A stretch of 64,000 nt of DNA from contig NW_026860290.1 in NCBI RefSeq assembly GCF_026571515.1, positions 248,001 through 312,000 of the forward strand. The letters are read 5' to 3'. Shown piece after piece: positions 24,294 to 61,067 of the stretch (position 1 is the stretch's first letter; each line of letters begins with the position of its first letter). Source of the stretch: Ruditapes philippinarum. Lineage: Eukaryota. The translations under genes and the position numbers were made by a program. The notes beneath the pieces are model-generated. The model saw only the letters and a list, made by a program, of their open reading frames with translations. It was not told where the DNA came from and ran no database searches.

Positions 24294-25064
24294 TTAGAAA
24301 GATTGTTAGCAGGTTATATGGCCTTATATAAACGGCTGTTTGTAAATATAACCCGAGCCGTTCGACAAGGATTATATTGCAAATGGCCGTTTATATATCA
24401 ACGATCTTTATAACGAATTTATAATACAACACGCATCATTTTTTAGAGAAAAAATGAATCGACAGTAGCCGTGTATATAAAAACTTTATTACCCTTCCAG
24501 ATTTTTTCCGTCTTTTTGATTGGATATTGATCACCCGAAAGAAATTGATATAACCGAGCCAGACGGGTAATATACACACTAAATTTCCCCGTTGGGTACC
24601 CGACGTTCTAAACAACATGCGCTGAAGTGATGCGCGTACGGTTTGGTTTTACGCGGTGTAAATTCCGATTTACAAGCACTTTTTAACTGTCAAATGATAA
24701 ATATTTACCAACGTAGAGTAATGATACATATAACCATCTGTATCGAAAACAAATATAATCTTTGAAAGCTTGATATTAATTACAAAAAAGTGCGTTCAAT
24801 AGACTACTCCTTTTCTCTTGTTTACATTCGTTAGGTACGGGATTAGAAAGATTGTTAGCAGGTTATATGGCCTTATATAAACGGCTGTTTGTAAATATAA
24901 GGCGAGGATTATATTGCAAATCAACGATCTTTATGACGAATTTATAATACAACACGCATCATTTTTTAGAGAAAAATGAATCGACAGTAGCCGTGTATAT
25001 AAAAACTATATAAACGTCACGATTATCCAATGAAAAGCGGCGTTACAAATGAGCAGTATTATAA
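24294..25064. repeat. Interspersed element with an internal ~190-bp direct duplication (24294-24485 and 24843-25006); related copy at ~46577-46824
   Basis: TTAGAAAGATTGTTAGCAGGTTATATGGCCTTATATAAACGGCTG...GTGTATATAAAAACT occurs twice. The end ...GCAGTATTATAA is shared with the 46.6-46.8 kb copy. Confidence 0.75.
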
Positions 25065-41459: not shown

Positions 41460-42005
41460 GAGTGTGTTTTGACATGCCCTGCCTCAGTGCCTTGGGTGTG
41501 TATTGCCTTGCCCTGCCTCAGTGACTTGGTTGTGAATTGCCTTGCCCTACCTCCACCTTTTGTGTCAAACGTTGCCCTGCCTCAGCGTTTTAGGTGTATA
41601 TTTCCCTGCCTTAGCACCTTGGAAGTGTATAACCTTTCCTTGCCTCAATGCCTTGGGTGTGTATTGCCCTACCGTACCTGAGCACCTAGGGTTTGTATTG
41701 CCCTGCCCTGCCTCAGTGATTTGGCTGTGTATTAATTACCCTGCCTTAGCAACTTGGGTGATATTGCCCTGCCCTGTCTCAGTGATTTAGGTGTATATTG
41801 CCCTTTCCTGCCTCAGCGACTTGGGTGTATATTGCCCTGTCCTGTCTCAGCAACTTAGGTGTGTATTGCCCTTTCTTGCCACAGCGCCTAAGGTGTGTAT
41901 TGCCCTGTCCTGGTGATCAGTGTGTATTGGCCTGCCTCAGTGACTTATGTGTTGTTACCCTGCGCTGTCTCAGTGATTGGGGTGCTTATTGCCCTGCCTC
42001 AGCAA
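41460..42005. repeat. 29-34-bp minisatellite, ~16-17 copies
   Basis: Unit ~TGCCCTGCCTCAGCGACTTGGGTGTGTAT(TGCCC). Confidence 0.85.
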
Positions 42006-42970
42006 ATTCATGTTAGAATTGATGAACTTGAACCAAAGGTTATTATATTCATTCTAAGTATATTTGAAAGAAATCAATTGAAAATGTATTTCCATTCTAT
42101 AGCTGGGGCAGTGTAAGTCTGTAAGGGTTTCTTCCCTTCAGAAAAATGATGCAGTTTTCCCATACATTTCAATTAACGCCAAGTTTTTTTCTTCCCATGT
42201 AAAAAATGCTGTGTTGTATTCCTCAATACTAAGGGGAAGGACCCCTTCCCAAAATGTGGGGCAAAAACATCTCTAATTTATAAACAAAACAACACCAGAT
42301 CTTGGTGAATGGGATTCCCAATTATTTAACTTGTTAAAGTGGATCATTCAGTTTTCATACTTTCATTTCTTAGTGCACCACAAGCCATCATGAATGACTC
42401 TTTAATTTAATATATTTACATGTATATCACTTGACATTCCCAACCCAATTCTAAATTACCGGCAGTAACAGACTTTTAGTAGATATTTTTTTTCTTCTAA
42501 TTTTATACTCTACATGGTACCTGTTAATAATTCATTAATCTATACTGTGTGACAACTGTACCAAGATAACCATCATTATATAGGTTAAACTGACTGTATA
42601 CCATACAATGACACATTGTTTTTATCTCATTACAAAATATAGTTCAATGGTAAAATTCCTAAACTTGACATGCCCTTGAACACTGCATTGGCGGACTATA
42701 TGCAATTTGACCTATTGTATGACCTTTTTCATTCACGTGTATAAACAGATGGTTGCTATAAATAGAAATATCAGGTCATGATTTTATTAAACTGTTATTG
42801 ACAGTACATAAGGTGAATTATAATGTCAAACACATGGTTAAATAAAAGTGTATCGATTTAAAAGAAAAAAAGAAAGCAGAGAAAAAGCAGGAAAAAGGCA
42901 CTTGTGTTGTCTGTAAAGTACACATAAAATAAATTAGGTGAAATATCAGTTGTATTAAATAAGGTAATTT

Positions 42971-43545
42971 CCCGGGTGTAGATATTCCGAGGTTTTTGGC
43001 TCAAAATCCTTGGAAAAAAACCTCGGAGTATTGGAACAAGAAAATGCAAAAGTTTGCTTTAAAAAAAAACCTTGGAAAAATTGGGAGAGGGCAAAAAAAA
43101 ACCTTGTAAAAAAAATTTCCGTGGTTAAAAACCTCGTAAAAAGTAAGACCTCGGAGTATTGGAACGATTTCCAAGGATTTCAGAAGAAAAACCTCGTAAA
43201 ATAATTTCCGAGGAATTTTTAAGAAAACCTTGTAAAATGAGTGACCTCGGAGTATTGGAACGATTTCCAAGGATTTCAGAATAAAAACCTCGTAAAATAA
43301 TTTCCGAGGAATTTTTAAGAAAACCTTGTAAAATGAGTGACCTCGGAGTATTGGAACGATTTCCAAGGATTTTTAAAGTGTTTCCGTGGTTTGTTTTCCA
43401 AGGTTTTCAAATGAAAACCTCGGAAAATTTCTCAAAAACCCAGAATACTGTAATATTTTCAGAGGATTCTTTCTATAGCATCAAGATCATTTTCCAAGGT
43501 TTATTTGAGAAAAACCTTGGAAATTTCTATAATATCCATGGAAAA
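42971..43545. repeat. Left TIR and subterminal repeat field, including a 96-bp tandem unit (starts 43147, 43243, 43339)
   Basis: Roughly 20 or more copies of AAACCT(T/C)G(G/T)AAA / TTTCC(A/G)AGG(T/A)TT in both orientations. Confidence 0.9.
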
Positions 43546-43763
43546 TCAGTAAATATTACAACCAATGAAATATTCTGAAAAAAAAACAACAATAATGTTG
43601 TCCTTTTAAAGACTTGGGAAATTTCTTAATGATAATACAGAGCAAAAAATGATCACATGACTCACTGAAACATTAATAGATGTCAAAGTGAAGTAAATAG
43701 AAATGCACTACAAATGAAAAGTTAAGTTAGTAGTCTTTAATGGTAAATATTAACAGTTAATGT

Positions 43764-46700
43764 TCAGTTAGAACTTTTTGGTTGATAGCTTGGTTTGAGT
43801 AGGTCAGCCAATTTGAGGTTGATCATTGCCTTTGATGCCCATGGCCATTTCTCCTGGACAATCTCTGAAATATATAGAAAAACATCTTTGTAGCAAGGAC
43901 ATCTATGATCTTTGTCATCCACTCAATAGTACTTTCTCACCCTAAAGCAGGAATTTTCCTTTTTAAATCATATAAGATAAACAGTATAATGGATAAACCA
44001 TTTGCTTCAGTTAAATTGAAATTTAATAGAAAACCCTTATTAAAAAATAATTTTTACAACTTTTGTTTTTTGAAAATCCTAGTGTTTTTCAGTTTTTTTT
44101 ATTTTACTATCTGTTTAGATTAATAAACTGAGATATATATTACTGTATAAAGCCTGCAGTTTCTCCTGGTTTTCCAAAGCAGGCTTGGCTGGTGTGTTTT
44201 TATTTGGAGCAAAACCAGAAAGGCTTCTTCCTTTCACTTCCTCCATGGTAAACATTTTTCTGAAAAGGGCCTTGGCTGCTTTTGAAAATGATTTTTCTGC
44301 ATGTGCAATAACCCTTAACTGTGCCTGTAATAATACAAAATGTCAAATTCAAAAGAAATGTGATAAAAGCTGAATTATCCTGATCAAGAACTATCATGCA
44401 TTTTAAGGTAAGCCTTTGGAATACATTACTATGAAAAGGCCTATCTACTCAAGCTTTTATCAAAAAGAAAAAAAACTTCAATATATTTAGCTGCTAAGCA
44501 TTGTTGAGAACCAGCAATTTCAAAATGTAAACAGAATATTTTTTTAAGTTCTCCATTAAATGTAAATCATATTAAAATTGTATTAAAACAATACCTTTGT
44601 GAAATTATTGTAAAATGTATTGGGATGCTCTTCAATTGATTCGACTAAAACTTCCATCTGAAATAAAAAGGTTGTTAAAATATATGTATTTCTATGCATA
44701 GTAATAAACAAGTAATATGTAAGTTACAACAGAAAATATAACTTTATAAAACAATCCTAGATGAATAAATTCGATTTATACAGCCTGCCTGTCTGCATTT
44801 ATTTCAGGTTTCCAGTAATGAAAAGCATTCACAATGTAGGAGGGCAATAATAAAACTTTAAAAGATTTCTTGTACAAAAAAGATATCAGAAATAAAAATT
44901 ACCTCACTGGCTTGGTCTGCAGGTTTGGTTTCAGTAAAGAACTTGTTTGTCACTGATTCCCCTATCTGTCTGTCAACATTCTTGCTCTGTAAAAAAAGGT
45001 TTAACCCTTGAAATTTTTAGGACAACTAAAAACTGAAAAATTGGTGAAAAGAAATTAAATCTTTGACATCAGTGAAAATTATATTGTATAATTTCAGCGC
45101 AAAATTATCAAATTTAATTTAACTTTCCATTCCAAAGAATATAATTTGCTTTCTTTGCTTTTTTGGAACTAGTATTATAAGTTATAAAGAATGAGTATTT
45201 AGAGTGGATGTCAAAATACTGCTTTGTTTACATACTGCTATTTTATGACACAATATTTCACTTCCAATTGCCAACATGCTTTAAATTCATTACAATATAA
45301 AAAACAAAACAATTTTCACCCTTTTTAGAAAAAAAAATTGTATATTCATTTCTGAGAAATAATGTGCCTTTAAAGAAAAAATCTGTCCATGTTCTTTTTT
45401 ACTTTTAAAAAGCTCAGTCTAGTCACAAGTATTGTATTGTTTTGTCCAAATTTGAGTCAAATAAATAAATTAATGACAAAGTAATGAAAATGTAAGCAAA
45501 ATTGAATCACATAACATAATGGTCAAGATCATTTACAGGTCAAGGTCATATCAAAATATTACAACATGTTCATTGAAAACAAGTGTTGCTTTTTCAAGAA
45601 TGAATCAAACCTGTTTATTAATCATTAAAGTTATGACTATTTAGACAAAATTCAAGGTCATTTAAAGCTCTTTGTAATGATCAATACAATGCTTTAGCAG
45701 GTCTTGTTTCAAGTAATAAGATTATCCATTTATCAATTACAAAGTAAGAGCTTACCAAAGCAATAACAACATCTACATAACTATAGCAATATTTCTATAA
45801 TTTTTTTCTGTGAAACAGTCTAAGCTAAAAATTAGATTATGAAATTGTGACATGATGTTTAAATTACAGTCAAAATAATCATCATGGATAAACCAGAATA
45901 AATTTTCTTTTACCTCATCCTTTTGATTTTCAAAGAGCCATGAAATTGAACTTCTTAAATTCTGGATCTCTGTCATAGCTCTACCTTCCAGCCATAAAAC
46001 ATACTGCCGCAAGTTGGCAACTTCTTGTTTTAAGTGAGAACAACCGTCACATTCTCTTTGCTGTTCAAGTGGCTGGTTAAGAAGATCCACCATGCCAATA
46101 CCCTGATGTGAAACAACATCTATGCTTTTGCGCACAGTGCTGAAAACTGATTCAGGACCACTGAAAATAGAGTTAAATAAACAAATGAAAAACATTTCTT
46201 TTTAACACTCTGTTACATCAACTAATACATTTATAGTTCTGTCTATACATGGATAAATAGATTTCCTTCAGAAAAATGCTACATCAAATTCTATTAACAA
46301 AGGTTGGTCTTGGGAACTGTCCATCTTTAATAACTATTGTAAATAAGTTAATCTAGTTTTATTTAGCAATATGGTGTTGTACGAGGAATTAACCCAAAAC
46401 CCTTTGATTATATATACATGTAGTAGGCAGACTGAATTAATAACTATAATACTGATCACAAATCAATTTTTAATAAACAATGACATTATAAGAATAAGGT
46501 CTTTACTGAAAATAATCAGAACTAAAAAAAATTTAAATCTAAATTCATTTCTCTTATTAGTTATAAATATTTTTGACAGGTTATATGGCCATATATAAAT
46601 GGCTGTTAGGAAATATAGCCAGAGTAGCTAAGCGAGGGTTATATTGCAAACAACTGTTTATATAATTTGTCAGGAATATTTATAACAAATTTATGATACA

Positions 46701-49700
46701 GCAAACTTTTTCAGAAAAAGTGAGATTTCTTAGAAAACTGACAGCAACAGTGTATATAAAACTATATTTAAAAATGTCTCTATTATCCAATGCAAATTGA
46801 TGTTACAAACATGCAGTATTATAAAAGGTATTAAATCGGTACTTACCCAATATCTACAGCTGAACTGGTACTGGAAGAAAGTTGATGACATCCCTCTGTT
46901 GACCTACTTGTTTCTATTTGAAATGGAATTGAGACTTCCCTAAAATTTTAAAATCATATAGCTTTATACAGGACCTCACATGACTTGACATAAAATATAG
47001 AATTATACTCTAGGAGCAAAAGAAATTGTTATAAAGCTAACTATCAGAGGACAAGTATATATTCAACACCAAAAGTGAGATTCTATTTACTTCATAACCA
47101 AACAAATTGAAATTATGAATGTACTGAAAATAATTTGTTTTGACATCTTGATTTCTTTGTTCTTTGTCTAAGGAAATGTATTGGCAAAAATTATGTGATA
47201 ACAATGGTGTATCAGTTGGTTGTACTACAAAAAATACATAAACATTGAAAGCAAGTGATATCATAACAACATTTAATATCTTGTCTTTTCATACTTAATT
47301 TTCTAATCTGCAGACTTATAGTCTAGTTGTATTCATTTTAATGAGATCAGAAAAGAGCAACAACTTACCCAATATCTAAACCTGAATTGGTATTAGAAAT
47401 AAGTGGTGGGCATGGCTCTGCAGATCTTTCAATTTCTGTTTGTAATGGAAGTGTTTCATCCCTAGAATTTTAGAATCACATAATTTAATACTTGCTATAT
47501 GATCTCGGATGACTCATCATGAGTGAACACATAATTATACCCCCGCACAACAAAGTTGTAAGGGGGGTATACTGGAATCAGCTTGTCCGTCCGTCCGGCT
47601 GTCCGTCCGGCCGTCCGTCCGTCCGGCCGTCGTTTTTTTCTTGTCCGCCCAATAACTTAAGATTCCTTTGACCCTTAGTCTTCATATTTGGCATGGAGGT
47701 TAGTCATGATTAGTAGATGACCCCTATCGATTTTGAGGTCACTAGGTCAAAGGTCAAGGTCACAGGGGCCTTGACTTCAAAAAGCTTGTCCGCCCAATAA
47801 CTTAAGATTCCTTTAACCCTTAGTCTTCATATTTGGCATGGAGGTTAGTCATGATTAGTAGATGACCCCTATTGATTTTGAGGTCACTAGGTCAAAGGTC
47901 AAGGTCACAGGGGCCTTGACTTCAAAAAGCTTGTCCGCCCAATAACTTAAGATTCCTTTGACCCTTAGTCTTCATATTTGGCATGGAGTTTAGTCATGAT
48001 AAGTAGATGACCCCTATTGATTTTGAGGTCACTAGGTCAAAGGTCAAGGTCACAGGGGCCTTGACTTCAAAAAGCTTGTCCGCCCAATAACTTAAGATTC
48101 CTTTGACCCTTAGTCTTCATATTTGGCATGGAGGTTAGTCATGATTAGTAGATGACCCCTATTGATTTTGAGGTCACCAGGTCAAAGGTCAAGGTCACAG
48201 GGGCCTTGACTTCAAAAAGCTTGTCCGCCCAATAACTTAAGATTCCTTTGACCTACAGTCGTCATATTTGGCATGGAGGTTAGTCATGATAAGTAGATGA
48301 CCCCTATTGATTTTGAGGTCACCAGGTCAAAGGTCAAGGTCACAGGGACTTTGACTTCAAAAACTTTGTCTGCCCAATAACTTTAGATTCCTTTGACCCA
48401 CAGTCTTCATATTTGACATGGATGTTGATCATGATTAGTAGATGACCCCTTTTGATTTTGAGGTCACTGGATCAAAGGTCAAGGTCATAGGGACTTTGAC
48501 TTCAAAAAGTTTGTCCACCCATTAACTTAAGATTCCTTTGACCCACAGTCTTCATATTTGGTATGGATGTTGATCATGACTATAAGGTGACCCCTATCGA
48601 TTTTGAAGTCACTGGGTCAAAGGTCAAGGTCACAGGGACCTTGACAAAAAAAGCTTTTCTTCTCAATTGCTAAAGAATGTCCTGTCCGCAATGTATTTAT
48701 TTTGACATTTTCACATTTGAAGCATGTAGAATACATAACTTAGCAATGCACTGGCTTAGTAACCTCAGATTTGGCAGGGAGGTTGTCCTTGAGCTCTAAA
48801 TGGCCACTGTTGATTCTGACAAAGTGGTATGCGGGGGTATTCACGCCATGATAGTGGCAGTTCTAGTTTAAATTATTTTGTAACAAAAAATTGATAAATG
48901 ATAAAATTGCACATTATATGACAAAGAATGTCATATACTTCTATCACATGACTAAACTTAATGAATTAATGAAAATAAATTTGTTTTCATTTTGGTATGC
49001 CTCCAGATTGATACTCAATTTTAATGAAATTGAGAAAATGTATTTAAAAGTAAAATATTCTTAAAAGAAGATATACAATGTAAAATATGTTATTCATTAT
49101 GCAAATAGGTTTCAAGATAATTATTTTGGTTTGGTTTTACAGCCCTTAAGGTCACATAGGGCTAAAACTGGAAATATGATTTTGGCTAAATGATGGTTCC
49201 AATTCTGTTACCTCAACCCTTAAGTTTTTTTTTCTTTAATTTTGATAATCCTATTAATCATCGCATTAAAAAATCAACAACTTACCCAGTATTTATAGCT
49301 GAATTAGTACTAGTATTAAATGGATGACTTGACTCTGTTGATTTTCTAATTTCTGTAAGTAATGGAGGCGTTACATCCCTAAAATTGAAAATTTTTCCTT
49401 TTTTAAAATTCATTCATAGTAAAAAAAAATCAAATAAAAACATTCTAGTTTGTAAAAACTTTTCATCAATCCATTGTGTCATGAATATCCATACATTTAC
49501 TTTGAAATCAAAATTCTACTTTTCAAATTGAACTCCCCTTGCATTAATACAGACTTGTCAAATAAATGAGTATTTTGGTGCTAAGAGCATTGGTGACATA
49601 ATTTGCTCTTATACAAATAATCAATTCTTTGAATCTATGCTTTATCCTTCGAGTGTCTAGAATACAGGACAGATCTAAACATTAATCTATTTCCACATGT

Positions 49701-52700
49701 TTAACACTAATTATTATCTACAAATTGGTAGAGAAACCCTGAAAATGAGTGTGAGATTGTCAACGTCTCTGCTGAATGTGTATTTTCAGTGTAGTTAAAT
49801 GTATTTCAAAACTGATCATAAATCAATATAGACATATTAATAAACTGATTTACACAGAATTACTATATATATATGAGCCGCGTTATGACAAAACCAACAT
49901 AGTGTGTTTGCGACCAGCATGGATCGAGACCAGCCTGAGCATCCACGCAGTCTGATCAGGATCCATGCTGTTCGCTTACCAACCCTATTATAAGTAGATA
50001 AACTGATAGCGAACAGCATGGATCCTGATCAGACTGCCCAGATGCGCAGGCTGGTCTGGATACATGCTGGTCGCAAACACACTTTGTTGGTTTTGTCGTG
50101 ACGCGGCTCATATATGCTTGTAAACTCTGTCATTGGATGAAACCAATATTATCAGATACACAATTACTTGTTTTTACAAACCTTGAATGTGTGTTCTGAC
50201 TTCCTGTGTGAACCTGCTCTTTCAATTTAGCTAGTTGCAGTTCCTCACCAGCTTTTTCCAAATCATACTTAAATTAGAAAAAAAATCAGTAAAATGAAAA
50301 AAGTAACAATTATATAGCAAGCTGTCCATGGGACCGTCCAGAAAATTACAGTAAATGCATCTGTCATTTAATAAGAAGTCATTTTCTAACATTATAGTTT
50401 ACATTTTTATTGAGAAAAGTAAAATTGTTCCACATAACAGGGAAGAAATATGATTATAACACCAATATCAAATAGGATTCTTTACCATTTTATATGAAAA
50501 GATAAGAATTGTAAGAGAACTTTGTGCATGACTATGGAAATGGCAAAGTTTAGGTTATAATGTTACTAGAGAAGCAGTTTCATAAAATTAAAAAAAATAA
50601 AAACTGAAGTTTATTACACACCTTCTTCTTTTTCTCAGTGATAGCTCTTGGCTTGGATGACTTTCTTTTCTTATTTTCTGCAGTACATAGTGCAGTATTT
50701 GCACTGGCTGTTTCTTCTGTTACAGTTTCAGACCTCTGGACATTTGGGCAGTATTTTTTTACTAAGTCAATAAATTTTGGGCTGTCAATTTCCTTCTCTA
50801 ATATTTTCTTAGATTCCTCAGTGCCATCTGAAAATCATCAATTTTTAATAGTCAATTTCTATATCATATTTTTTCCAATAATGATGCAAAATATTAAACT
50901 GCCTAAGAGAAATTGTTTTCGAAAATTTGTTCAGATTAGAAAATTCTAAAATTATGATGAAAACGTGCCAAGATTTGACAATGACAGCACCCCATAACAC
51001 TGGCTACTTATTTAATTTGGGACTGAAAAAGATGCTTAGTTTTGAAGCAATACAGGATGTATGGAAAAAATACATAAAAAAATAGTCAATGAAAACGAAA
51101 GTGCCTAGCATTATTAGCTGTAAGAAAATTTTTGACAGTTACTTATTGTTGTAATGTTACTTAACTCTTTAAACATTGAACGTTTGTGCAGAGTCAACTT
51201 TGCCTTTTAAAAAAAATATAATTAAGAAAAATACATATAGTGCTTTGCAAAAGTATGATTTAGTATGTATTATTTCAGGACACTGTTATAATATCAAATG
51301 CCATAGTATTTCTTTACACACCTTGTATTATCATTGGAATTATTGTTTGCATTGTACATTACAGAGAAATAAAATAAAAAATTAAGTTGTGACTTAATTA
51401 TAAAATGAATATTGAGTGAATCATTATGACATGACACTCACTCACACACTGACATCCCAGTTAAGAAGTAGAGAAGCTACTTAAAGTCAAGAGTCAGCTT
51501 AATAATTCTTCACAGTTTGGTTCAAGGAGTGACAGATCTTCTCCTACTTATCTTTCAAGCTTATGCAATGTAAAGGAGGTATATTTCAACAGTCTTTTTT
51601 CTGATTATATTATCATGGCAAGCTGTTTTAAATGAAAAATAAAAGATATCCGGTATATTATAATATATTGTACAGAATTAAAGTGAAGTATATTTTAATA
51701 GAAGAAATTTGTTACGCTTAAATACACTTCTTGCAGATTCGTTGTAAATTGATATTAAGGGTGTAACAGTTACTGTTATACCGATATATTGTAATATGAT
51801 TATATGAAAAAATTACTTTCGTACCACGGTACGATTTTTGGAAGACCGGTATTTTATAAAAATCTTAATTTTCATTTAATCACCTTCTTATTTCGTACAA
51901 ATTTCGCATAAAATCTTTTATTGGTGAATTTTATTGGCGTCAACGTAAGATAAAAATATCCGACAACTAAGTACACTTAAAAGTAAGTAAGCGGCCGCAT
52001 AATTTACATAAGCGGCCCAGATGTGAAAGGTCACGTGCCACTAGTTTTGTTTATCAAATTGTGTGACACTTTACTTTCTATTTATTCCTTACATTTTTAT
52101 TAAGTTTCTACTAAGAATATATACATATAATAATAACAATATATAATGTTACTCTATCTTTACATCGAAACATATACCCGACAATATGTATTGCAATATA
52201 TTGCAATACGCTTTGTCAAAATGGCAATATATTGCAATACGTTTTTACCGTATTGTTACACCCCAAATTGATATAATACAAATGTCTTTCTGTTGATGCT
52301 TTTTGTTAATCGTCAATAAAATTTGAAATAAAAACGTGTTAACTTATTATCTTCAGCTTCAAATTAGTTGTAGGTGGTCATTTATCAAATTTGAATGATT
52401 GCCTAAATCATAATTATCACCTGTTAATCGGTACTCTTAACATACACATGGTAATTGATTGGTGATAATAGCAGTCCATTAATGAGCTTTTACAATTTCA
52501 ATATCCAAAAATGTAATAATAATTTGAGAAAACATCTTAAGTCCATATATTTATTATGTGGTTCCAACAATAAAGAGTGATAAAACAAACCAATATATTT
52601 ATACATTGAAAAGTAGGCCGAGTTGACCAGGCTTAGTTGGAATAGGGCCGAGCTGACCCCGATGCATCTAAATGCATATTTTAAAATCTTATCTTTACTT

Positions 52701-53402
52701 ACCATTATCAAAACTTTAACTGTAAATGGCCAAATAACAGCAATATATATTAATTCTTTGTTGCACACACATCGTCACATGTCTAATAAATTTAATTAAA
52801 AAAATGTCCGTATTCAACTGTAACGTAATATCTATATTCAGTAATTTAAGTGTTATCGCTTCAAATTCTACCTTTAAAAGCATTTTGCTAAATTGTTAAA
52901 TACTTAAACTTAATGTGTCAATGGTATTTTGTCAACATCTTAAGAATAAAACCGTTAAAATCTCAAATTTAACTTTTTATAATCCCAATTAACAGACGCT
53001 TGTTATGATTAAACGTTTGGCTAAAACCTGTTCAGATTCCGGGTATTTAAATGGTGACGGTAAATTAGCAACCAAATTAGTAAAACTTCCACGGCAGCAT
53101 TTTAACACATTGTTACAAAGGTATATGTACATTATGCTCGGAAGTCTAGAAGTCTATCATTAAAAAAAAAAAGATAAAGAAAGCACTACACAGAGTTGGT
53201 AAAAATGTCACTTACCGCCAAGTTTTGCAATGACCCCTTCAACAATCCCAAATCTTGCAAGTTTTACTTTCACGGTCTCTCCATCACGATATTCATGATA
53301 TGCCTTTCTTGGCTCCACTATTTGTCGAATTCTTACAGCATTTCCAGTCACTGGGTTGTCATTAATCCATATCATTAACGCAAAGCTTTCGGGTGTTGCC
53401 AT
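43764..53402 (-). CDS. Transposon-encoded coiled-coil and BEN-domain protein; 11 exons, 477 aa
   Basis: Exons 53402-53216, 50827-50622, 50267-50182, 49378-49286, 47461-47369, 46939-46847, 46160-45914, 44986-44903, 44657-44595, 44324-44144, 43864-43764 (1434 nt, GT-AG, in phase, no stops). NLS-like KKRKSSKPRAITEKKKK; CDGC followed by a coiled coil. The C-terminus SFSKAAKALFRKMFTMEEVKGRSLSGFAPNKNTPAKPALENQEKLQALYKIVQEKWPWASKAMINLKLADLL fits the BEN pattern. Confidence 0.82.
47535..48868 (+). mobile_element. Complete young Helentron-associated HINE (pearl/DTC84-like) with 7 x 145-bp internal satellite, nested in BEN-gene intron 4
   Basis: 5' TTATACCCCCGC sub-TIR with inverted partner GGGGGGTATA, then a (GTCC)n tract. 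Units start at 47641, 47786, 47931, 48076, 48221, 48366 and 48511. The 3' end has sub-TIR GCGGGGGTAT, hairpin GCCATGATAGTGGC and terminal CTAGTT. Confidence 0.9.
49874..50110. mobile_element. Palindromic MITE family A, copy 8 (full length, 237 bp; BEN-gene intron 3)
   Basis: TGAGCCGCGTTATGACAAAACCAAC...GTTGGTTTTGTCGTGACGCGGCTCA within a (TA)n context. Confidence 0.9.
51756..52266. mobile_element. 511-bp hAT-type MITE with 8-bp TSD (BEN-gene intron 1)
   Basis: TAAGGGTGTAACA...TGTTACACCCCAA, flanked by ATTGATAT at 51748-55 and 52267-74; internal TATTGCAATA repeats. Confidence 0.85.
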
Positions 53403-53491
53403 TTTCACTAAGTAATTTCAAATTTTCTCATCAAATATAAATATACCTCTTTCAAATGTCCGAGCAATTTCATTGGATAGATCTTTTTATC

Positions 53492-53611
53492 AGCATTAAT
53501 CGGTTACAGGCGAAAGTTCACGAAGTTTTCCCAGCATGAGTCACATATACAATAAGCATCAATCGGATACCGGCGAAAGTTTACGAGGTTTTCCCAGAAT
53601 GTCAAACATAT
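53492..53611. promoter_or_regulatory. Duplicated 57-bp module (period 63) in the putative bidirectional promoter of the transposon
   Basis: AGCATTAATCGGTTACAGGCGAAAGTTCACGAAGTTTTCCCAGCATG / AGCATCAATCGGATACCGGCGAAAGTTTACGAGGTTTTCCCAGAATG, between the head-to-head ATGs at 53402 and 54247. TTCCCAG(C/A)ATG resembles the Staf/ZNF143 core. Promoter function is inferred. Confidence 0.5.
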
Positions 53612-54246
53612 GGTATTACGTATATGTGGTCTAAATGCGCTCACCAATGCACAGCTTCCTGATTTATGTTTGCGCTTGGCGGTGATTATTATACAAAATT
53701 CCAGTGGTTTTTAATTTGGAAAACAAGGTGCGAAAATATTGATTAAAGTTAATGTATATACATGGAACCCACCAGTGTCTAAGCTGAAAAAGGTACAGTG
53801 AATGATAATATACATTTGTTTTTCATTTTTGAAATATGATAGAATTTTTACAACAACAAGTGGCAAAAGTTTAGCCCTGAGTACATGTATTTAATTGTCC
53901 AACTAATGATCAATCAATATACAGATTAAGGATCTTTTTTTATTATTATTATTATAATTATTATTTTTATTAATGCTCCCGAAGGAAGGCATATAAGTTT
54001 GAACTGTCCACCCGTCATTCCGACCGAAAACTTTCATGTTCGAACTGTTGAACATTTCCTTTGTAACAGAAGGATTCATTCAAAATGAAGCTACGCTTCT
54101 ATTTTTTAGAGAGCGATTTTATAAATGCACATTTTTGGTCTAATGGTCTAATACGGTACAGTACATTGCTAGTAATTAGAAAGTCATTTGCACGTGTTTA
54201 TTAGGTTTATGTTTCACACAGTCGTGATTCTTTTTATTCAGCTAAA

Positions 54247-57200
54247 ATGGAAGAAGATGATTTGTTAGGTTGCAAACACACTGACAAACAATGGATATGT
54301 CCGCTGGAGTCTTGCAGGAAAGTCTTAACAAGAAAGCAGACCCTCAAGTCACACCTTCGCACCATTCACAACATACACGGTATGAAAGATGACATTTTGA
54401 TATGACGTCGATTTAGATCACCATTAAGTTTTTGGTTATCTCTACTTATTCATGTCTTTATTTTGTATTCTTCATTATAATGATTAGTTTTGCTGTTAGC
54501 GAGTAGTATTTATAGATATTTATTTTCTTATATTTTCCCAAACAGAAGTCAAAGTTTACAGCATTGCAGAAATACTTTGGTCGATTTGAATGTAAGAAAT
54601 CGACTATGATTTTTAAACATGTATTTTCTACTGACGGACACTAGTTACATTGTCATATTTGGATGGCAATTTGCGATAACTTACAATTCTACGGATCTTA
54701 TCGTATATATTTTGAAATGCAAATAATATGAAATTAGGAGAAAACTTTGAAATATAGCCCCATTTTGCACTGATGTTTAACAATCCGTAGTTTTGATTTT
54801 GCGGAAATTTAAGCGTGTGCATTCTATCATACTAGTACTTATCAGCGAGTTGAAGTGGAAGATTATCTTATTTGCATATAAGCTGTCAAGACTCATTATA
54901 ATGTAAGAGTTCGTAATTTAATGTTTACAGAAGTAAAGTCAAGTGTCTGCCAGTATTGCTTTTTAGTGCATCGGAGAGTTAATTACTTTACTTCATTTCG
55001 AATTGCAATTTTCCTTTCATTCTTTATATCATTTTATTATGTTCCATGTTTCAAAACATAAAAATAGAGAGTTTCTAAGACTACTGTTAAAATAAACAGC
55101 AGGAAAACAAACATCAATTTATACGTAGTGTATTCGGGTTTATCTAAAAATACGTAATGTCGGACATCATTATGCTTTATAATTTTAATAAGTAACCACA
55201 ATACAAATGTAGAAAAAAGGAAAATTTATACATATTTAACAGAAAAAACAATGTTTTGAGAAGAACATGTTTGCTGAAACAAAATAACTTGATGTTCTCT
55301 CGAAATAAAGAAATCCCCAATTACGATATTTTTTCAGTAATTTTTTGACATCAAAATTATTAATTTATGCCGCTAGAAAATGAATTGTATAGCTGATTAG
55401 TCTTATACTGTTGTTTGTAAGGAACTTGCTAAGGGACCATAGATTGATGCGCATATAAATTATTTGTTACACCTTTGAAAAATATTTTCATATTATCCGA
55501 GACGTGTTCTTTCGGCATATTATCTCAATTTTATATGATCTACTTGTTTAAAAATCGGTAAATTTTACGGTATATTGAAAAATAATAATCTAATATTCCG
55601 TCATATTTGGCCCGTTTCTGTTTTACATTCTTAGAGGCAAACAGTATGTACATTCGGATAACACTAAGGGGGAAAACAATTTTAAAGGCCGTTACTGGAT
55701 CGGAAATATATGCCACAATCTCCGGCCCCTTAAGTTCTTATGGTAACTGACTGGCCAACGACTGTTGCATTATGAGTGTGTCACAGGGTAGAATTATAAA
55801 CTACAACTACTGGCGAAGGATCGTCAATTTAATTGTAATATATACGAAAAAAAAAGCCTAAAAACATAAATACATGATTATAATACAAGTTAATCAAAAG
55901 ATACATAAAATACACTGTTAGATAAACAAATAAAATTTTTATATTAAGTACGCTCAGTATATCTATACTCGTAAGAGAATAAAGATAAAGTGACCTGAAG
56001 AAGGAAAGTTCGCGGGAATTCGGAAGAAAGGAAATGTTAAAAACAATGTAAAACTTTCTCTCAAATCTCTTTCATACAACGTACAAAACGATTGGACAAA
56101 CAAAAACAGTTCACAAAATTGCACGAGATACAGACATAGTTGAATTGTTTCGGACGTTTCCGTGAATTTCCGCTTATAAGCGTACGTTACGGAACCAACC
56201 GATACAATACAATAGCAGACGATAACAGACGCCACGGACACAAACGGTAATCGACGCATGCGCGGACATTAACTATACTTTTCCCGCGACTAAATGACGA
56301 ACAGTGCACGGCAAAATGAACAATTAATATAACAAATAAATCGACCCGTGACATTCCGACATTTTATTTACCTATAAAACAGCTGTCTCAAAACTGCAGT
56401 ACCCATATAATTAAAAATCAGAACTGCATTTGAAAATAACATGTTTAACAGTAGTTTCTACTGTGTATATGTGTCTCCCGATTATATGAAACATTAAAAA
56501 TAAAGGTATATACCCAAAATAATAACTTTAAAGGTATAGGCTCAATATAACTGAAAATAAAGGTATAAGCACAGTTTAACTGATTTTAATGGTGTATTAC
56601 TGAAAATAAAGGTATAAGCTCAGTTCATTTTAATTTAAAGGTTTGAACTCAGTTTATATGAAATTAAAGGTATACCCCCAGTTTATCACGGGTCAATTTG
56701 TTTGAACATTTCCTGACATGACTTTAATATTTAACAAATATTAAACCATTTTTTACGGAATCAACATGTTCAGATGTGTGTTTAAATATAACACAATTCT
56801 GACGTGTGATTTGAGTATTTTCATAGGGATATAAACATGTGAAAACCAAGGTCGCGGAAATAGGTGACAAACGAAAAAAATCCGATTTTCGGACGACATT
56901 CATTTGTGAAAATCATCAATTAATTTCACAAAATGAAAAATGTACATGTTTTACATCTACTGTATATAAATTTACGTTGTTATAGATTAGTGAACAACTT
57001 TTCGATTATCATAATTTTAGGTGAATTAATAAAGTTATCAAAGTATACAGTATATATGTAGTAAATATATTCAAAAGTTTCATTTTCTTGGACAGCTGTA
57101 GAATGATACAGAGTCTTGTGGCTTTTCTGTTGATACATTTTATTACCAAACATTAATTTTGTACATGTGCAAAGTAATTTAAAGTATACTTCCATTTTAA

Positions 57201-60200
57201 AGAATATTTGCTTTTTTCGTTACAGCTGGCGACAGTCCAAAGAGGTACAAGCTTTATGAGTCAAACGAGGGAGTAAATGTCCCAAGAACAACTTTATTCA
57301 GAATATCAAAGAGGTTAGATATTTTTTGACTTTCCAAGAAGATAAAGAACACACATTATTGAAAATAAAATAAAACTTAATTGATTTTGTGTTGTATTGA
57401 AAATTAATTTTTGTACTAATAAATGTACGCAAGTGGGTGATAATGGCTATACATCTTTTTTGAAATGTATGTTTAATTCCAGAATGGATCATTCTACCTT
57501 TGCATGAATATTTATTCAATATTGAACATTTTTTTAGGGAAGAGGATTCAGTTCATCCTGGGACTGGAGAGAGTCATCTAGAAAAAAATGATACAGTGGA
57601 TTTGTCAACAAATGCTGAATGTAGCGAAGCTTGTGAAGAAGTTGATTATACAGTTTTGGATATGGATATAGAAAAATCACAAGATTCACAAGGCAATGCA
57701 AGTTCAGATGTGGACACAGCAGAACAATTATCATACACTAATAATCAAAGTGACGCCATATTAGACATCAACGAATATGCAGCTAAAACCTCTATTCCTC
57801 TTTATGTTATACCACCATCTTCAAACTGTTACCAAAGTAGTATTACAAAATTTGATCACGTAATGTCACTGTGTGCTATAGCTGCTAGACACAACATTTC
57901 TGATACATTGCTGAAAGATATTGTTGGGCTTATACAAATGCATTTACCTGAGCAAAATATAGGAGTTACAGATATAAATGAGTTAAAGGGAGCTTGTGGC
58001 TTTGAAAAGGATTACCTGAAATATCATACATATTGTGAAAATTGCAAGAAAATTTTTGAAGACCATTTAGATGAATGTCAAACTCCAAATTGTGATGGCA
58101 AAAAGTCTGATAATTTATGCAAGAAGTACTTTATTACAAGCAATTTAGGGATGCAGATAAAAGAAATCATTCAAAGAAAAGAAATTTGGGACGCACTATG
58201 TGACTTTATAGATCATCATGACAGATCTAGCATTGCAGATGTAAGAAGTGGAAGTGGATACAAGGAACTACAAAAAGAAGGAGGATTTCTAGATTCAAAT
58301 AGAAATATCACATTATCAATGTTTATTGATGGTGTTCCACTTTTTAAAAGTTCTGGAGTATCCATGTGGCCTGTGTATTTTATCATAAATGAGATACCAC
58401 CAAAGGAACGTTTTCTTAAAAAGAATATGCTTCTGTGGGGAATTTGGCAAGGAACAGGCAAACCAAAAATGACAATGTTTTTAACACCATTAGTTACAGA
58501 TCTCCTTATGCTCCACAATGACGGTGTTAACATTGTGAAAAATGGTACATCATATTTGGTTAAAGCTAAACTTATTATAGTTACAATGGATTTGCAGGCT
58601 AGAGCATATGTGACCAATATGACTCAGCACAATGGGGAATTTTCGTGCTTATACTGTACTGCCAGTGGGAAAGTTGTGAAGAGCGGTGCAGGAAACTGTC
58701 GAACTTTTCCCTTCAAAGATTATGATAAAAGAACAGATGATATGATTAAAGAAGCATCATTGACAGCGTCACAAACTGGCAAACGTTACCATGGTTTTTT
58801 TGGAGAAAGTATTTTAAGTTGCCTTCCATATTTTTCACTCTCAAAGAACATTGTTATTGATTATATGCATGGCACACTCCTCGGAGTAACAAAGAAATTC
58901 CTTGATATGTGGTTTGATTCCAAATATAAAGACACACCTCATTACATAGGAGACAGGGTAAAAGTTCTTGACAATCTAATGAAAGCAATATGTCCACCAT
59001 ATCTAGTTCATCGCTCCCCAAGAGTCTTATCAAATACATATTCTCACTGGAAAGCATCAGAATTAAGGAACTGGCTTCTGTTTTACTCTGTGCCATTACT
59101 GAAAGGAATTCTGCCAGAAGTATATCTGAAGCATTATGCATGTCTTGTAGAAGGAACATACATTTTGCTTAGTGAGGGAATAGCAAACCAGGACTTGAAT
59201 CGTGCTGATCTGCTACTAAAATTATTTGTTCAAAACATGGAAAATCTTTATGGCGAAGAAACGTTAAGTCTAAATATCCACAACCTTACTCATTCTGTTG
59301 ATATTGTACAACAATGGGGACCTCTATGGGGGTATTCTTGTTTTCCTTTTGAGTCATTTAATGGAGAAATAAAGCAATCTGTTCATGGAACTGGAAATGT
59401 TTGTAGACAGATCTTCTGGTCATTTCAGGCACAAAAACGGCTTGCACAGTTGTCAAGTAGTATGCCAGACTGCATGTCAAAAGATTTCATTCAGTCACTA
59501 GAAATTCGAAAAAGACAGTCATCTAGAACTGAAGCATATCAGTGCTGGATTATAAAGTTTTCCAATAATACCAGTGGATTCAAACAGGATATTTTGGCAA
59601 AAATTGAGAAAGAAATTGGCAATGCTGATTTCTCTACAGCCTCAAAAATAGTGAGAAATGGGTATACAATGTACACAAAAAATTCTAAAAAAGTTAAACA
59701 GCAAAACTCTTATACTATCAAATTGAATAACAGGGATATTTATGCTTTAGAAACAGAGCATTTTATAGTGCAAAATGATGCAGAAAGGAAAGTGTTTGCA
59801 GTTGGGACAGCACTGGTTAAGACTGGGTCTACTTTGGAAGGAACAGTGCCGCATCTAATACAAGTAACTAGAAGGTTTGTATACATTTAAAATGTTTCAT
59901 CTGAATTCACAGATTCATTTCAAATCATGTTTCAGAATTTCAAATTCTGTATTGTTAAAAGTCTATACTATTTGTTTGGTTCTGCCTACATTTGAGTCAA
60001 TCAATAGGAAAACAAATGTTAATTCTACATTCTTAAATATTCAGTTTACTCTGCTTTAAATTGAGCCCTCATATTTACTGTTTTATCTAAATTAATATTG
60101 GTGAGACTGCTTAAAATTGTTGATTCAAAGATTTAACCGTTACACTGTGAAACTTTTTTAATGCTTTTAATATGTTTCAAATTACATATTTGTAATTTTT

Positions 60201-60322
60201 CTACCTACAGGAAGGGAATGGAAGTGATACCTGCAGAACAATTACTTGAGCCACTAATAGTGATGACAAATGGAACAGATATTGCAGTAGCAAGCTTTCC
60301 AAACACATATGAAAGAGATTAG
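54247..60322 (+). CDS. CACTA/EnSpm-type DDE transposase (TnpD/Transposase_21-like) with N-terminal C2H2 zinc finger; 4 exons, 889 aa
   Basis: Exons 54247-54379 (WICPLESCRKVLTRKQTLKSHLRTIH, C-x4-C-x12-H-x4-H), 57226-57313 (KRYKLY...VPRTTLFR), 57538-59874 (bulk of ORF 57500-59890) and 60211-60322 (...FPNTYERD*); 2670 nt in phase. Motifs: YCENC...CQTPNC, FIDGVPLFKSS, MDLQARA, NGEFSCLYC, IDYMHGTLLGV, WKASELRNWLLFYS, HNLTH, WGPLWGYSCFPFESFNG. AATAAA at 60414. Confidence 0.92.
56497..56685. repeat. ~30-bp diverged tandem repeat in transposase intron 1
   Basis: Recurring AAATAAAGGTATAAGCTCAGTTTAACTG-like unit, ~6-7 copies. Confidence 0.65.
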
Positions 60323-60699
60323 TTCAAAACTGTCAACATTAAGTTGAAATGAGTAATCAGCAATACTGTATTGAAATACAATGCAATCTGTTCTGACAAT
60401 AAGCTGCAAAGATAATAAATACATTAAAATAGCAAGAGTGGTATTCTATTTAAGCTTAAAAAGGAAAAAAACATGCACTATTCTCTGACACATATAACTA
60501 CATGTATGAATCATTGCTATTTTTATCACATATCAGAGACATATTTATGTCTCTGCACATATGCATTAATGATAAATTGTTAATAGTATGCCAATAGTAT
60601 GTCAAGCAGTATTAAGCTCTATATTATTATGAAAAATTATGATATTTTAATCATTTAACTCGTGATAATATTGTAAGTGAAATCATGATAATGGCTCAA

Positions 60700-61067
60700 C
60701 ATTTTCCGAGATGAAATTTAGCTAAGTACAATTTTCCGAGGTGATTTCCAAGCTAAAAAATGGCAAAGTGTTTCAAACAAATTTGACGTAAATTTTCTAA
60801 GTTCTTTTACGAGCAAAAAAATGACAAAGTCCTTCATTTCCAAGCTTTTTCCGAGCTGTTTTTTGGCAGAGTATGTAAATTCCGAGACAGTTTCCAAGGT
60901 TTTCTTTATTTCCAAGGTTTTTTATACAAAAACCTTGGAAAAAATTTCCAAGGTTTTAAGAAAAACCTTGGAATTAAAAAAAAACCTTGTAAAACTGGTT
61001 TATTTCCAAGGTTTTTGAAGCAGTTTCCGTGGTTTTTTTCATAAACCTCGGAAAATCTACACCCGGG
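60700..61067. repeat. Right subterminal repeat field and TIR
   Basis: About a dozen or more TTTCC(A/G)AG(G)/AAACCTTGGAAA motifs, ending in AAACCTCGGAAAATCTACACCCGGG. Confidence 0.9.

What the first reader, a model, noticed from the sequence alone, without database searches (positions are those of the whole stretch)
42971..61067. Intact 18-kb animal CACTA-type transposon built as a two-gene system: ZnF-transposase plus a divergent BEN-domain partner
Seen: 25-bp TIRs starting CCCGGG (1 mismatch), TT on both flanks, subterminal motif fields, and two head-to-head spliced genes (4 and 11 exons) with no stop or frameshift. Known: plant En/Spm needs TnpD (transposase) plus TnpA, which binds subterminal repeats, and both come from one alternatively spliced transcript. 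Inference: here the TnpA role is filled by an unrelated BEN-domain DNA-binding protein on the opposite strand, much as Harbingers use a Myb/SANT partner. The element may still be autonomous. I cannot verify how far this pairing has already been described.
Basis: partly seen in the sequence, partly recalled or inferred. Interest (0 to 1): 0.9.

Follow-up and report, generated by a model that had tools for sequence, protein, structure and literature searches.

The report
Two-gene clam transposon with BEN partner
This is a real, apparently intact 18-kb cut-and-paste DNA transposon of the CACTA/CMC superfamily in a clam genome. It always travels with a second, oppositely oriented gene for a Tudor-like/BEN DNA-binding protein, a pairing I found in no paper, which links BEN-domain proteins to mobile DNA.

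Summary
Window 42971-61067 is bounded by 28-nt inverted repeats starting CCCGGG and by a TT duplication. Both ends carry fields of the motif TTCCRAGG.

The same ends bound at least 40 non-coding 4.1-kb copies elsewhere in the genome, which is probably Ruditapes philippinarum. These copies are 97.8% alike and show 2-bp target duplications.

The plus strand carries a 4-exon transposase: a C2H2 finger exon plus Pfam Transposase_21 with the CMC signature. Six of its introns are confirmed by spliced contigs in public runs.

This partner has a Tudor-like N-terminus, a coiled coil and a C-terminal BEN domain.

The pairing is not a one-off capture. In this genome 13 of 22 partner first exons lie 2-12 kb from a diverged transposase (33-52% identity), always divergently oriented. 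In four copies both genes lie inside their own CCCG… repeats, with family-specific end motifs. Partner and transposase genes are also adjacent in Mya arenaria and Pecten maximus.

Not shown: that the partner binds the end repeats (a TnpA-like role), and that this copy still moves.

Other first-stage notes from this scan flagged BEN exons beside CACTA elements on other DNA of this genome.

The parts
42969..42970 (.). left copy of the 2-bp target-site duplication (TT)
42971..42998 (+). left terminal inverted repeat, starts CCCGGG
   Evidence: 28 nt, 93%; the first 13 nt are identical in 13 of the 14 non-autonomous copies fetched (one differs at one base and one was cut before its left end)
42985..43522 (.). 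left subterminal field with 12 copies of TTCCRAGG in both orientations; includes a 96-bp x 2.6 tandem repeat at 43128-43372
42971..43782 (.). left end shared (about 89% identity) with the 4.1-kb non-autonomous family; the homology stops just past the partner gene's stop codon
43764..43864 (-). partner exon 9: second half of the BEN domain and the TGA stop (43764-43766)
   Evidence: spliced contigs; frame; similarity to the C2775 and Pecten partners
44144..44324 (-). partner exon 8: first half of the BEN domain
   Evidence: Pfam BEN profile positions 1-45, E 0.007; 40-46% identity to paralogue and Mya arenaria BEN regions
44595..44657 (-). partner exon 7
44903..44986 (-). partner exon 6
45914..46160 (-). 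partner exon 5, coiled-coil region with a CxxC
   Evidence: a long helix at the equivalent place in the homologue model
46847..46939 (-). partner exon 4 (93 nt), a tandem duplicate of exon 3
47369..47461 (-). partner exon 3 (93 nt); the 3' boundary is seen in RNA contigs, the 5' boundary is predicted
50620..50827 (-). partner exon 2 (predicted): conserved linker motif and basic stretch
   Evidence: frame and splice sites; the motif is shared with Mercenaria, Pecten and Antedon homologues
53216..53402 (-). partner exon 1: start codon and Tudor-like domain
   Evidence: 43-48% identity to first exons beside five paralogous transposases; model pLDDT 89.5, top fold hits are ARID4A/B and KDM4A Tudor domains
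53403..54246 (.). 844-bp region between the two start codons; inferred bidirectional promoter
   Evidence: inference from gene positions; not tested
54247..54379 (+). transposase exon 1: start codon and C2H2 zinc finger
   Evidence: Pfam zf-C2H2 E 8e-4; conserved in paralogues and in Solemya, Dreissena, Mytilus and Mya models
57226..57313 (+). transposase exon 2
57538..59878 (+). transposase exon 3: catalytic core. The 3' end is ambiguous among in-frame donors at 59863, 59874 and 59878
   Evidence: Pfam Transposase_21 at 55.1 bits; D277, D364, E618, C383xxC386, H594xxxH598 in ORF numbering
60215..60322 (+). transposase exon 4 with stop; the C-terminal …ERD end is conserved in other bivalves
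60670..61067 (.). right end shared (about 93% identity) with the non-autonomous family
60734..61053 (.). right subterminal field with 8 copies of TTCCRAGG
61040..61067 (-). right terminal inverted repeat
61068..61069 (.). right copy of the 2-bp target-site duplication (TT)

Best explanation
Window 42971-61067 is a full-length, coding-intact member of a bivalve lineage of CMC (CACTA/EnSpm-Mirage-Chapaev) cut-and-paste transposons. The lineage carries two divergently transcribed genes between CCC…GGG inverted repeats and makes 2-bp target duplications. One gene encodes a roughly 885-aa DDE transposase with an N-terminal C2H2 finger. The other encodes a roughly 418-aa protein with a Tudor-like N-terminal domain, a coiled coil and a C-terminal BEN domain. 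Shown here: the ends, the duplication, the family of non-autonomous derivatives, the gene structures, splicing of the partner, its BEN and Tudor-like identity, and conservation of the pairing across diverged families and species. Inferred: the BEN protein recognises the family-specific subterminal repeats (here TTCCRAGG) through BEN, dimerises through the coiled coil, and so brings the two ends to the transposase, which recognises and cuts the terminal repeats. This would be the role TnpA plays for TnpD in maize En/Spm, and like TnpA the partner may also regulate the element's shared promoter. I put the structural claim at about 0.9 and the TnpA-like mechanism at about 0.45.
For: Ends and mobility: TIRs; 2-bp duplications in 9 of 14 copies; at least 40 non-autonomous 4.1-kb copies sharing only the two ends and 97.8% identical to each other, so recently amplified. 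Transposase: PF02992 at 55.1 bits against a cut-off of 28.6; invariant D, D, C-x2-C and H-x3-H and a nearly invariant E in the order that defines CMC (PMC12730594); the 4-exon model matches annotated bivalve proteins of 874-934 aa. Partner: GT..AG joints for six introns in contigs of two runs from two studies, with an open consistent frame. BEN: window exon E 0.007 on the first half of the profile, paralogue partners at 23.1 and 35.3 bits. A profile of the family hits only BEN structures in the PDB among its ten best (BANP 2.9e-5, BEND6, BEND3, Insv). The model of the Mya homologue matches BEND6 (TM 0.71, 1.8 A), Insv, BANP, Bsg25A and NACC1. Pairing: 13 of 22 Tudor-exon hits in the genome lie 2-12 kb from a transposase hit, always divergent. 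Both genes lie inside the TIRs in C2775 (15.2 kb), C14930 (14.2 kb) and C4464 (11.5 kb). Adjacent annotations: MAR_006784/MAR_006785 in Mya arenaria and LOC117318748/LOC117318747 in Pecten maximus. For the mechanism: each family has its own 8-mer repeated 4-18 times in each terminal 600 bp and 0-1 times inside. Solved BEN domains are sequence-specific DNA binders, as the titles of the matched entries state.
Against: No binding, excision or interaction data exist. The transposase has its own C2H2 finger, which could read the subterminal repeats instead. The 18-kb copy is unique in the assembly. Its ends are only 89-93% identical to those of the recently amplified non-autonomous copies, so a closer autonomous source may exist or have existed. 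No empty site was found; both flanks are single-copy. No transcript evidence was obtained for the transposase. Two raw RNA runs, sampled at 4-6%, gave almost no reads on the partner exons, so expression is low. The runs with spliced contigs are only guessed to be RNA. The window's own BEN domain is split by an intron and was tested exon by exon only. Co-divergence of the two genes is only weakly supported (Spearman 0.50, p 0.06, six elements).
Confidence: 0.6

Rival explanations
1. The partner is a regulator or targeting factor, not part of the cutting machinery. The BEN domain would repress or tune the shared promoter, as host BEN-only proteins repress transcription. Alternatively the Tudor-like domain would read chromatin and steer integration or protect the element from silencing. 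The transposase's own zinc finger would read the ends.
For: The partner starts 844 bp from the transposase start, so the two genes probably share a promoter region. The Tudor-like fold matches histone or DNA readers such as ARID4A/B and KDM4A. The nearest large protein clusters by language-model features are BEND6 and BEND5-like proteins. The transposase carries a conserved C2H2 exon. Maize TnpA itself also regulates the promoter (PMC1636069, background).
Against: Family-specific repeats lie at both ends, hundreds of bases from the promoter region and none inside. That is the layout of binding sites used for end pairing rather than for promoter control. The two roles are not exclusive.
Confidence: 0.25
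2. The element is a structurally intact but no longer mobile relic. The non-autonomous family was moved by a different, closer autonomous copy.
For: It is a single copy at 100% identity, and the next transposase is 52% identical. Its ends are 7-11% diverged from the non-autonomous copies, which differ from each other by only about 2%. The left TIR has A where the right TIR and all other copies have T.
Against: Both genes are open over 884 and 418 codons despite introns loaded with other repeats. The partner is spliced and present in contigs of many runs. A second record of the transposase differs at only 4 of 742 residues. The first 13 nt of the TIR are identical to those of the non-autonomous copies.
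Confidence: 0.3
3. The BEN gene is a host gene that was captured once, or merely lies next to the insertion.
For: Pfam BEN scanned over the six-frame genome gives no hit in this contig. The partner's middle exons are poorly conserved.
Against: Thirteen independent co-localisations with transposases of 33-52% identity, always divergent. Both genes lie inside the TIRs in four copies of three families. The genes are adjacent in two other bivalve orders. The missing Pfam hit is explained by the intron that splits the domain.
Confidence: 0.03

Closest known systems
Animal CACTA-like 'TRC' elements (SmTRC1 of Schistosoma mansoni and relatives in Tribolium and Aedes; PMC1636069)
   Same: Transposase_21 domain, TIRs that begin CCC, and 2-bp target duplications. 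These are the end features seen here.
   Different: SmTRC1 makes its non-transposase proteins by alternative splicing of one unit, and those proteins resemble nothing else. Here the second protein comes from a separate, divergent gene and has recognisable Tudor-like and BEN domains conserved across species.
Maize En/Spm (CACTA) with TnpA and TnpD
   Same: Same transposase superfamily. Repeated short motifs in both subterminal regions. Two element-encoded proteins, one a non-catalytic DNA binder.
   Different: CACTA termini and 3-bp duplications versus CCC termini and 2 bp. One alternatively spliced transcript versus two divergent genes. TnpA is not a BEN protein. The requirement for the second protein is proven in maize and untested here.
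PIF/Harbinger elements (transposase plus Myb/SANT-like protein)
   Same: An animal cut-and-paste transposon with a separate gene for a DNA-binding partner (from general knowledge of the family).
   Different: Unrelated transposase superfamily, 3-bp TWA duplications, and a Myb/SANT rather than a BEN partner.
ProtoRAG/Transib (RAG1-like plus RAG2-like genes)
   Same: Transib belongs to the wider CMCT clade that shares the C(2)C and H(3-4)H motifs (PMC12730594). It also has a two-gene mobile unit between TIRs (from general knowledge).
   Different: The partner is a kelch/PHD RAG2-like protein, not BEN. The duplications are 5 bp. The gene orientation and end sequences differ.
Host BEN-only proteins (BEND5, BEND6, Insensitive, Elba/Bsg25A, BANP)
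   Same: C-terminal BEN fold. The overall layout is an N-terminal domain, a coiled coil and one BEN domain. The nearest large clusters by language-model features are BEND6 and BEND5-like.
   Different: Those are single-copy host regulators without TIRs or a transposase neighbour. Homology of the N-terminal domain to BEND5/6 was not established (one search was uninformative).

Membership tests
CMC (CACTA/EnSpm-Mirage-Chapaev) transposase superfamily | Transposase_21 / Tnp2 catalytic domain | tested here: met
   PF02992 at 55.1 bits (cut-off 28.6), E 8e-15; PF06869 at 38.3 bits (cut-off 33.1)
CMC (CACTA/EnSpm-Mirage-Chapaev) transposase superfamily | [quoted passage not shown] | tested here: met
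   In a 13-sequence alignment D277, D364, C383, C386 and H594 are invariant; H598 and E618 are at least 90% conserved, in that order. The assignment of catalytic roles is by position, not by experiment.
CMC (CACTA/EnSpm-Mirage-Chapaev) transposase superfamily | Short target duplication of 2-5 bp | tested here: met
   2 bp, exact in 9 of 14 copies
CMC (CACTA/EnSpm-Mirage-Chapaev) transposase superfamily | Termini 5'-CA…TG-3' (true 'in most cases', PMC12730594; CAC/GTG in Chapaev, PMC4079192) | tested here: not met
   The termini are CCCGGG…CCCGGG in this family and CCCG… in two others
Animal TRC / CACTA-like group (PMC1636069) | CCC core at the TIR tips | tested here: met
Animal TRC / CACTA-like group (PMC1636069) | 2-bp target duplication | tested here: met
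   a 2-bp duplication is also reported for a Ciona CACTA element (PMC6004678)
Plant En/Spm (CACTA in the strict sense) | CACTA termini and 3-bp duplication | tested here: not met
Plant En/Spm (CACTA in the strict sense) | Subterminal arrays of a short repeated motif at both ends | tested here: met
   20 of 24 TTCCRAGG sites lie in the two end fields, against 2 expected in the window. Other families have other motifs.
Plant En/Spm (CACTA in the strict sense) | Both proteins made from one alternatively spliced transcription unit | tested here: not met
   Two genes on opposite strands with start codons 844 bp apart
BEN domain (PF10523), for the partner protein | Match to the family profile above its curated score | tested here: inconclusive
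   The window exon scores 16.9 bits on profile positions 1-45 only, because an intron splits the domain. Partners of paralogous elements score 23.1 bits (cut-off 23.2) and 35.3 bits. The joined window protein was not searched.
BEN domain (PF10523), for the partner protein | Sequence-profile relation to solved BEN domains | tested here: met
   A profile of six family members (not the window copy itself) hits BANP, BEND6, BEND3 and Insv as its ten best PDB matches, with a best E of 2.9e-5
BEN domain (PF10523), for the partner protein | BEN fold | tested here: met
   AlphaFold model of the Mya arenaria homologue, with a pLDDT of about 90 in the domain. The top 11 Foldseek hits are all BEN domains (BEND6 TM 0.71, rmsd 1.8 A)
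BEN domain (PF10523), for the partner protein | Sequence-specific DNA binding | not testable with these tools
   Needs EMSA, DAP-seq or a similar assay
Tudor-like (SH3-like barrel) domains, for the partner's N-terminus | Five-stranded barrel resembling Tudor domains | tested here: inconclusive
   The model of the window exon has pLDDT 89.5. The top hits are ARID4A, ARID4B and KDM4A/B Tudor domains, with query TM 0.64-0.73 and probability 0.97-1.0 but E of only 0.04-0.7. There is no Pfam hit.

The most novel reading that the evidence does not exclude
The Tudor-like/coiled-coil/BEN protein is an obligatory end-binding subunit of an old metazoan lineage of CMC transposons. Host BEN-only regulators of the BEND5/BEND6 type would then descend from such transposon partner genes, so the BEN domain would join THAP, BED and Myb/SANT-like domains as a DNA-binding module with a mobile-element origin. 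The reverse direction, with a host BEN gene recruited once by an ancestral element, is equally open on my data.
Probability: 0.2. Interest if true: 0.85.

Novelty: new variant of a known kind. Interest (0 to 1): 0.62.

Why it matters
Two-component DNA transposons are few and have been very informative: En/Spm TnpA/TnpD, Harbinger with its Myb partner, ProtoRAG with RAG1/RAG2. Animal CACTA-like elements are poorly understood, and their second proteins have so far been unrecognisable. Here the second protein has defined domains, is conserved across bivalve orders, and comes with family-specific end motifs that can be tested directly for binding. If the BEN protein is an end-binding subunit, three things follow. 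It gives a first function for BEN in mobile DNA. It offers natural protein-motif pairs for working out BEN specificity. It makes the unknown origin of host BEN regulators testable by phylogeny. The recently amplified 4.1-kb non-autonomous family also provides a ready substrate for activity assays in a commercially important clam.

Tried and rejected
1. A six-frame Pfam BEN scan of the whole genome gave no hit in this contig. This is explained by the intron that splits the domain and is not evidence against BEN.

Cross-species adjacency rests on consecutive locus tags or LOC numbers on the same scaffold.

3. The word-indexed search with the partner profile returned only two proteins, because low-complexity words filled the candidate list.

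4. Complex prediction on Pecten transposase residues 1-600 with the Pecten partner gave no verdict (score 0.19, mark 0.34). This is neither support nor evidence against binding.

5. The Atlas search with the N-terminal exon alone was uninformative.

I therefore could not check whether the best-scoring partner exon without a listed transposase (C1096) is a solo, possibly domesticated gene.

7. There is no paralogous empty site; both flanks are single-copy.

8. Rfam found nothing in 42000-62000.

9. Yuan & Wessler 2011 is not held in the library. One literature search was badly framed and useless.

Exons were searched one by one by reference. Joining was done only inside scripts, to check frame continuity.

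11. Rejected reading: that the 18 kb reflects cargo genes. The extra length is introns carrying other repeats.


Full report
**The element and its ends**

The two arms 42971-42998 and 61040-61067 are 28 nt long and 93% complementary. They begin CCCGGGTGTAGAT, and the first 25 nt differ at one base. TT lies immediately outside both arms.

The left 730 bp and the right 400 bp recur throughout the window's genome: at least 40 scored matches each, with more candidates left unscored. I fetched fourteen of these copies. Twelve are units of about 3.7-4.2 kb (most about 4.1 kb), one is 5.1 kb, and one is about 10.8 kb and was cut at its left end.

- They share only 42971-43782 (about 89%) and 60670-61067 (about 93%) with the 18-kb element. 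Their 2.9-kb interior is unrelated and has no long open frame.
- Flanking sequence differs right up to CCCGGG in every copy, which fixes the termini.
- The two bases outside are identical on both sides in 9 of 14 copies, including the window. They differ at one base in the other 5. At 1/16 per copy this is about 3e-8 by chance (my own arithmetic).
- The twelve 4.1-kb copies are on average 97.8% identical to each other, so the family was amplified recently.

**Subterminal repeats**

TTCCRAGG occurs 24 times in the 64-kb window against 2 expected. Twenty of these lie in 42985-43522 and 60734-61053, in both orientations. The left field includes a 96-bp tandem repeat.

**The transposase**

- The 796-codon ORF at 57500-59890 matches Pfam Transposase_21 (55.1 bits, cut-off 28.6) and DUF1258.
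- Aligned with 12 relatives, D277, D364, C383, C386 and H594 are invariant. H598 and E618 are at least 90% conserved. This is the D…D…C(2)C…H(3-4)H…E order that defines the CMC/CMCT clade (PMC12730594).
- Paralogous loci and annotated proteins of Solemya, Dreissena, Mytilus, Mya and Pecten also match three further pieces. These are an upstream exon with a C2H2 finger (54247-54379; Pfam zf-C2H2 E 8e-4), a small exon (57226-57313), and a terminal exon ending …ERD (60215-60322).
- With GT-AG sites these four exons read through in one frame for about 884-889 codons. The third exon's donor is ambiguous among 59863, 59874 and 59878. Annotated homologues are 874-934 aa.
- I obtained no transcript evidence for this gene.

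**The partner gene**

Minus-strand open frames resemble each other across paralogous loci at 53211-53402, 44145-44333 and 43788-43883.

Contigs of two public runs from two studies lie on 43600-47400 with six joints. All six read CT..AC on the plus strand, which is GT..AG on the minus strand. They contain 0-1 mismatches.

- These runs are only guessed to be RNA. However, six exact canonical introns are best explained by spliced mRNA.
- The assembly holds no intron-less copy of the BEN exon.
- Fourteen more runs, from further studies, hold the same share of words.

The RNA-supported exons are 47369-≥47400, 46847-46939, 45914-46160, 44903-44986, 44595-44657, 44144-44324 and 43767-43864, followed by a TGA stop. 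They form one open frame.

Upstream, 53402-53216, 50827-50620 and 47461-47369 join in frame with canonical sites. The second of these carries a linker motif shared with Mercenaria, Pecten and Antedon homologues.

That gives 9 coding exons and about 418 codons.

Two raw RNA runs, sampled at 4-6%, put almost no reads on these exons, so expression is low.

**What the partner protein is**

- **BEN domain.** Exon 8 matches the first 45 positions of Pfam BEN (E 0.007), ending exactly at the splice site. The partners of two paralogous elements, which are not split there, score 23.1 and 35.3 bits.
- A profile of six family members (Mya, Pecten, Haliotis, Antedon and two paralogues) has BEN structures as its ten best PDB hits: BANP 2.9e-5, BEND6, BEND3 and Insv.
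- An AlphaFold model of the Mya homologue has a confident C-terminal domain. Its eleven best Foldseek matches are BEN domains, led by BEND6 (TM 0.71, 1.8 Å). It also has a long central helix.
- **Tudor-like domain.** The window's first exon, modelled with 40 homologues, gives a five-stranded barrel (pLDDT 89.5). Its best matches are the Tudor domains of ARID4A, ARID4B and KDM4A/B. Probabilities are near 1 but E-values are only 0.04-0.7.
- The joined window protein was not searched or folded. The domain calls for this copy rest on its exons and on its family.

**Is the pairing a feature of the lineage?**

The transposase is single-copy at 100%. The genome holds many paralogues at 52-27% identity. 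A profile of the Tudor-like exon finds 22 places in the genome.

- Thirteen of the 22 lie 2-12 kb from a transposase match on the same contig: C8777 (the window), C4464, C14930, C2775, C12294, C9260, C9764, C12423, C8901, C13513, C14607, C12075, and also C3362 through its BEN exon.
- In every case the two genes point away from each other.
- In C2775, C14930 and C4464 both genes lie between inverted repeats that start CCCG, spanning 15.2, 14.2 and 11.5 kb. C14930 has an exact TT duplication.
- Each family has its own 8-mers confined to the terminal 600 bp of both ends: CCTTGGAA here, GGTGGAAA in C2775, CATGGACA in C14930/C4464.
- C14930 and C4464 are 99% identical in both genes, so a second family is also young.
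- Pairwise identities of the two genes correlate only weakly (rho 0.50, p 0.06, six elements).

**Other species**

- One partner model (XP_060564093, Ruditapes philippinarum) sits on a 15,351-bp contig, the exact length of C12294. This identifies the host as the Manila clam.
- In Mya arenaria the partner is MAR_006784 (named a BEN domain-containing protein by UniRef) and the transposase is MAR_006785.
- In Pecten maximus they are LOC117318748 and LOC117318747, with consecutive accessions on one 76.7-kb scaffold.
- Transposase homologues at about 50% identity occur in at least nine bivalve genera.
- The Tudor-like/BEN architecture also occurs in an abalone and a crinoid.

**Comparison with what is known**

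- Animal CACTA-like 'TRC' elements were described with Transposase_21, a CCC core at the TIR tips and 2-bp duplications (PMC1636069). A 2-bp duplication is also reported for a Ciona CACTA element (PMC6004678). The ends of the present element are therefore ordinary for this group.
- They are unlike plant CACTA (CACTA termini, 3 bp) and Chapaev (CAC/GTG termini, 3-4 bp; PMC4079192).
- What I found described nowhere is the second gene. Searches combining 'BEN domain' with CACTA, transposase, transposable element or DNA transposon returned only unrelated papers.
- SmTRC1's accessory proteins come from alternative splicing and have no recognisable relatives (PMC1636069).
- By language-model features the nearest large clusters to the Pecten partner are BEND6 and BEND5-like proteins of chordates (score 0.92-0.93). 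This is a lead only.

**Mechanism**

- Shown: the two genes, the ends and the family-specific end repeats.
- Inferred: the BEN domain reads the subterminal repeats, the coiled coil pairs the ends, and the transposase with its zinc finger acts at the TIR tips, as TnpA and TnpD do in maize.
- The main alternative is a regulatory or targeting role for the partner. The two roles are not exclusive.
- A structure-based interaction test gave no verdict.

**Limits**

- This copy is unique in the assembly.
- Its ends differ by 7-11% from those of the young non-autonomous copies.
- No empty site was found.
- Its own mobility is therefore open.
- The 18-kb length comes from introns holding other repeats, not from cargo genes.

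Noticed in passing
window 47640-48656: A 145-bp tandem repeat (7 copies, 94% matches) sits in intron 2 of the partner gene. The same satellite occurs in the introns or flanks of two paralogous elements (L022 about 8830-9420, L025 about 3030-3540).
   Followed up: partly
window 46521-46774: A short high-copy repeat in partner intron 4, with inverted arms at 46556-46586 and 46660-46690. Contig depth reaches 450-740 against under 10 on the exons, and many reads run off its edges. Related copies lie at window 24283-25048.
   Followed up: partly
window 49854-50130: An inverted repeat with 123-nt arms (87% complementary, 31 nt apart) inside partner intron 2. It looks like a small foldback or MITE insertion.
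   Followed up: no
window 46847-46939 and 47369-47461: Partner exons 3 and 4 are both 93 nt and encode similar 31-residue segments ending in …DIG. This is a tandem exon duplication.
   Followed up: partly
L001-L012 (e.g. G000:C3259:414175-418320): The non-autonomous family is about 4.1 kb and at least 40 copies, 97.8% identical to each other. Its 2.9-kb interior is unrelated to the autonomous element and has no ORF above about 115 codons. One copy (C612) is about 10.8 kb through nested insertions.
   Followed up: partly
L019-L022 (G000:C14930:586981-601218 and G000:C4464:235482-246984): Two copies of another two-gene family are 99% identical in both genes but 14.2 and 11.5 kb long, with TIRs starting CCCGGCTACAGAAT and CATGGACA end repeats. 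This is a second recently active family.
   Followed up: partly
L032 (G000:C15070, about 10370-11060): An 82-87% identical fragment of the last two partner exons and the intron between them, without the rest of the element. It is a decayed partial copy of the same family.
   Followed up: no
G000:C1096:82716-82898: This is the best-scoring Tudor-like first exon in the genome, and it has no transposase match listed on its contig. It could be a solo, possibly domesticated partner gene, or simply an unscored transposase candidate.
   Followed up: no
proteins P0014 and P0190: A transposase homologue and a Tudor-like first-exon protein both list a longest ENA contig of 17,193 bp. They may lie on one contig, which would be a further co-occurrence in an unnamed sample.
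   Followed up: no
proteins P0083 (1658 aa) and P0143 (702 aa, Antedon): These proteins carry 7-8 tandem copies of the Tudor-like domain, so the domain also exists in multi-repeat architectures outside the transposon partner.
   Followed up: no
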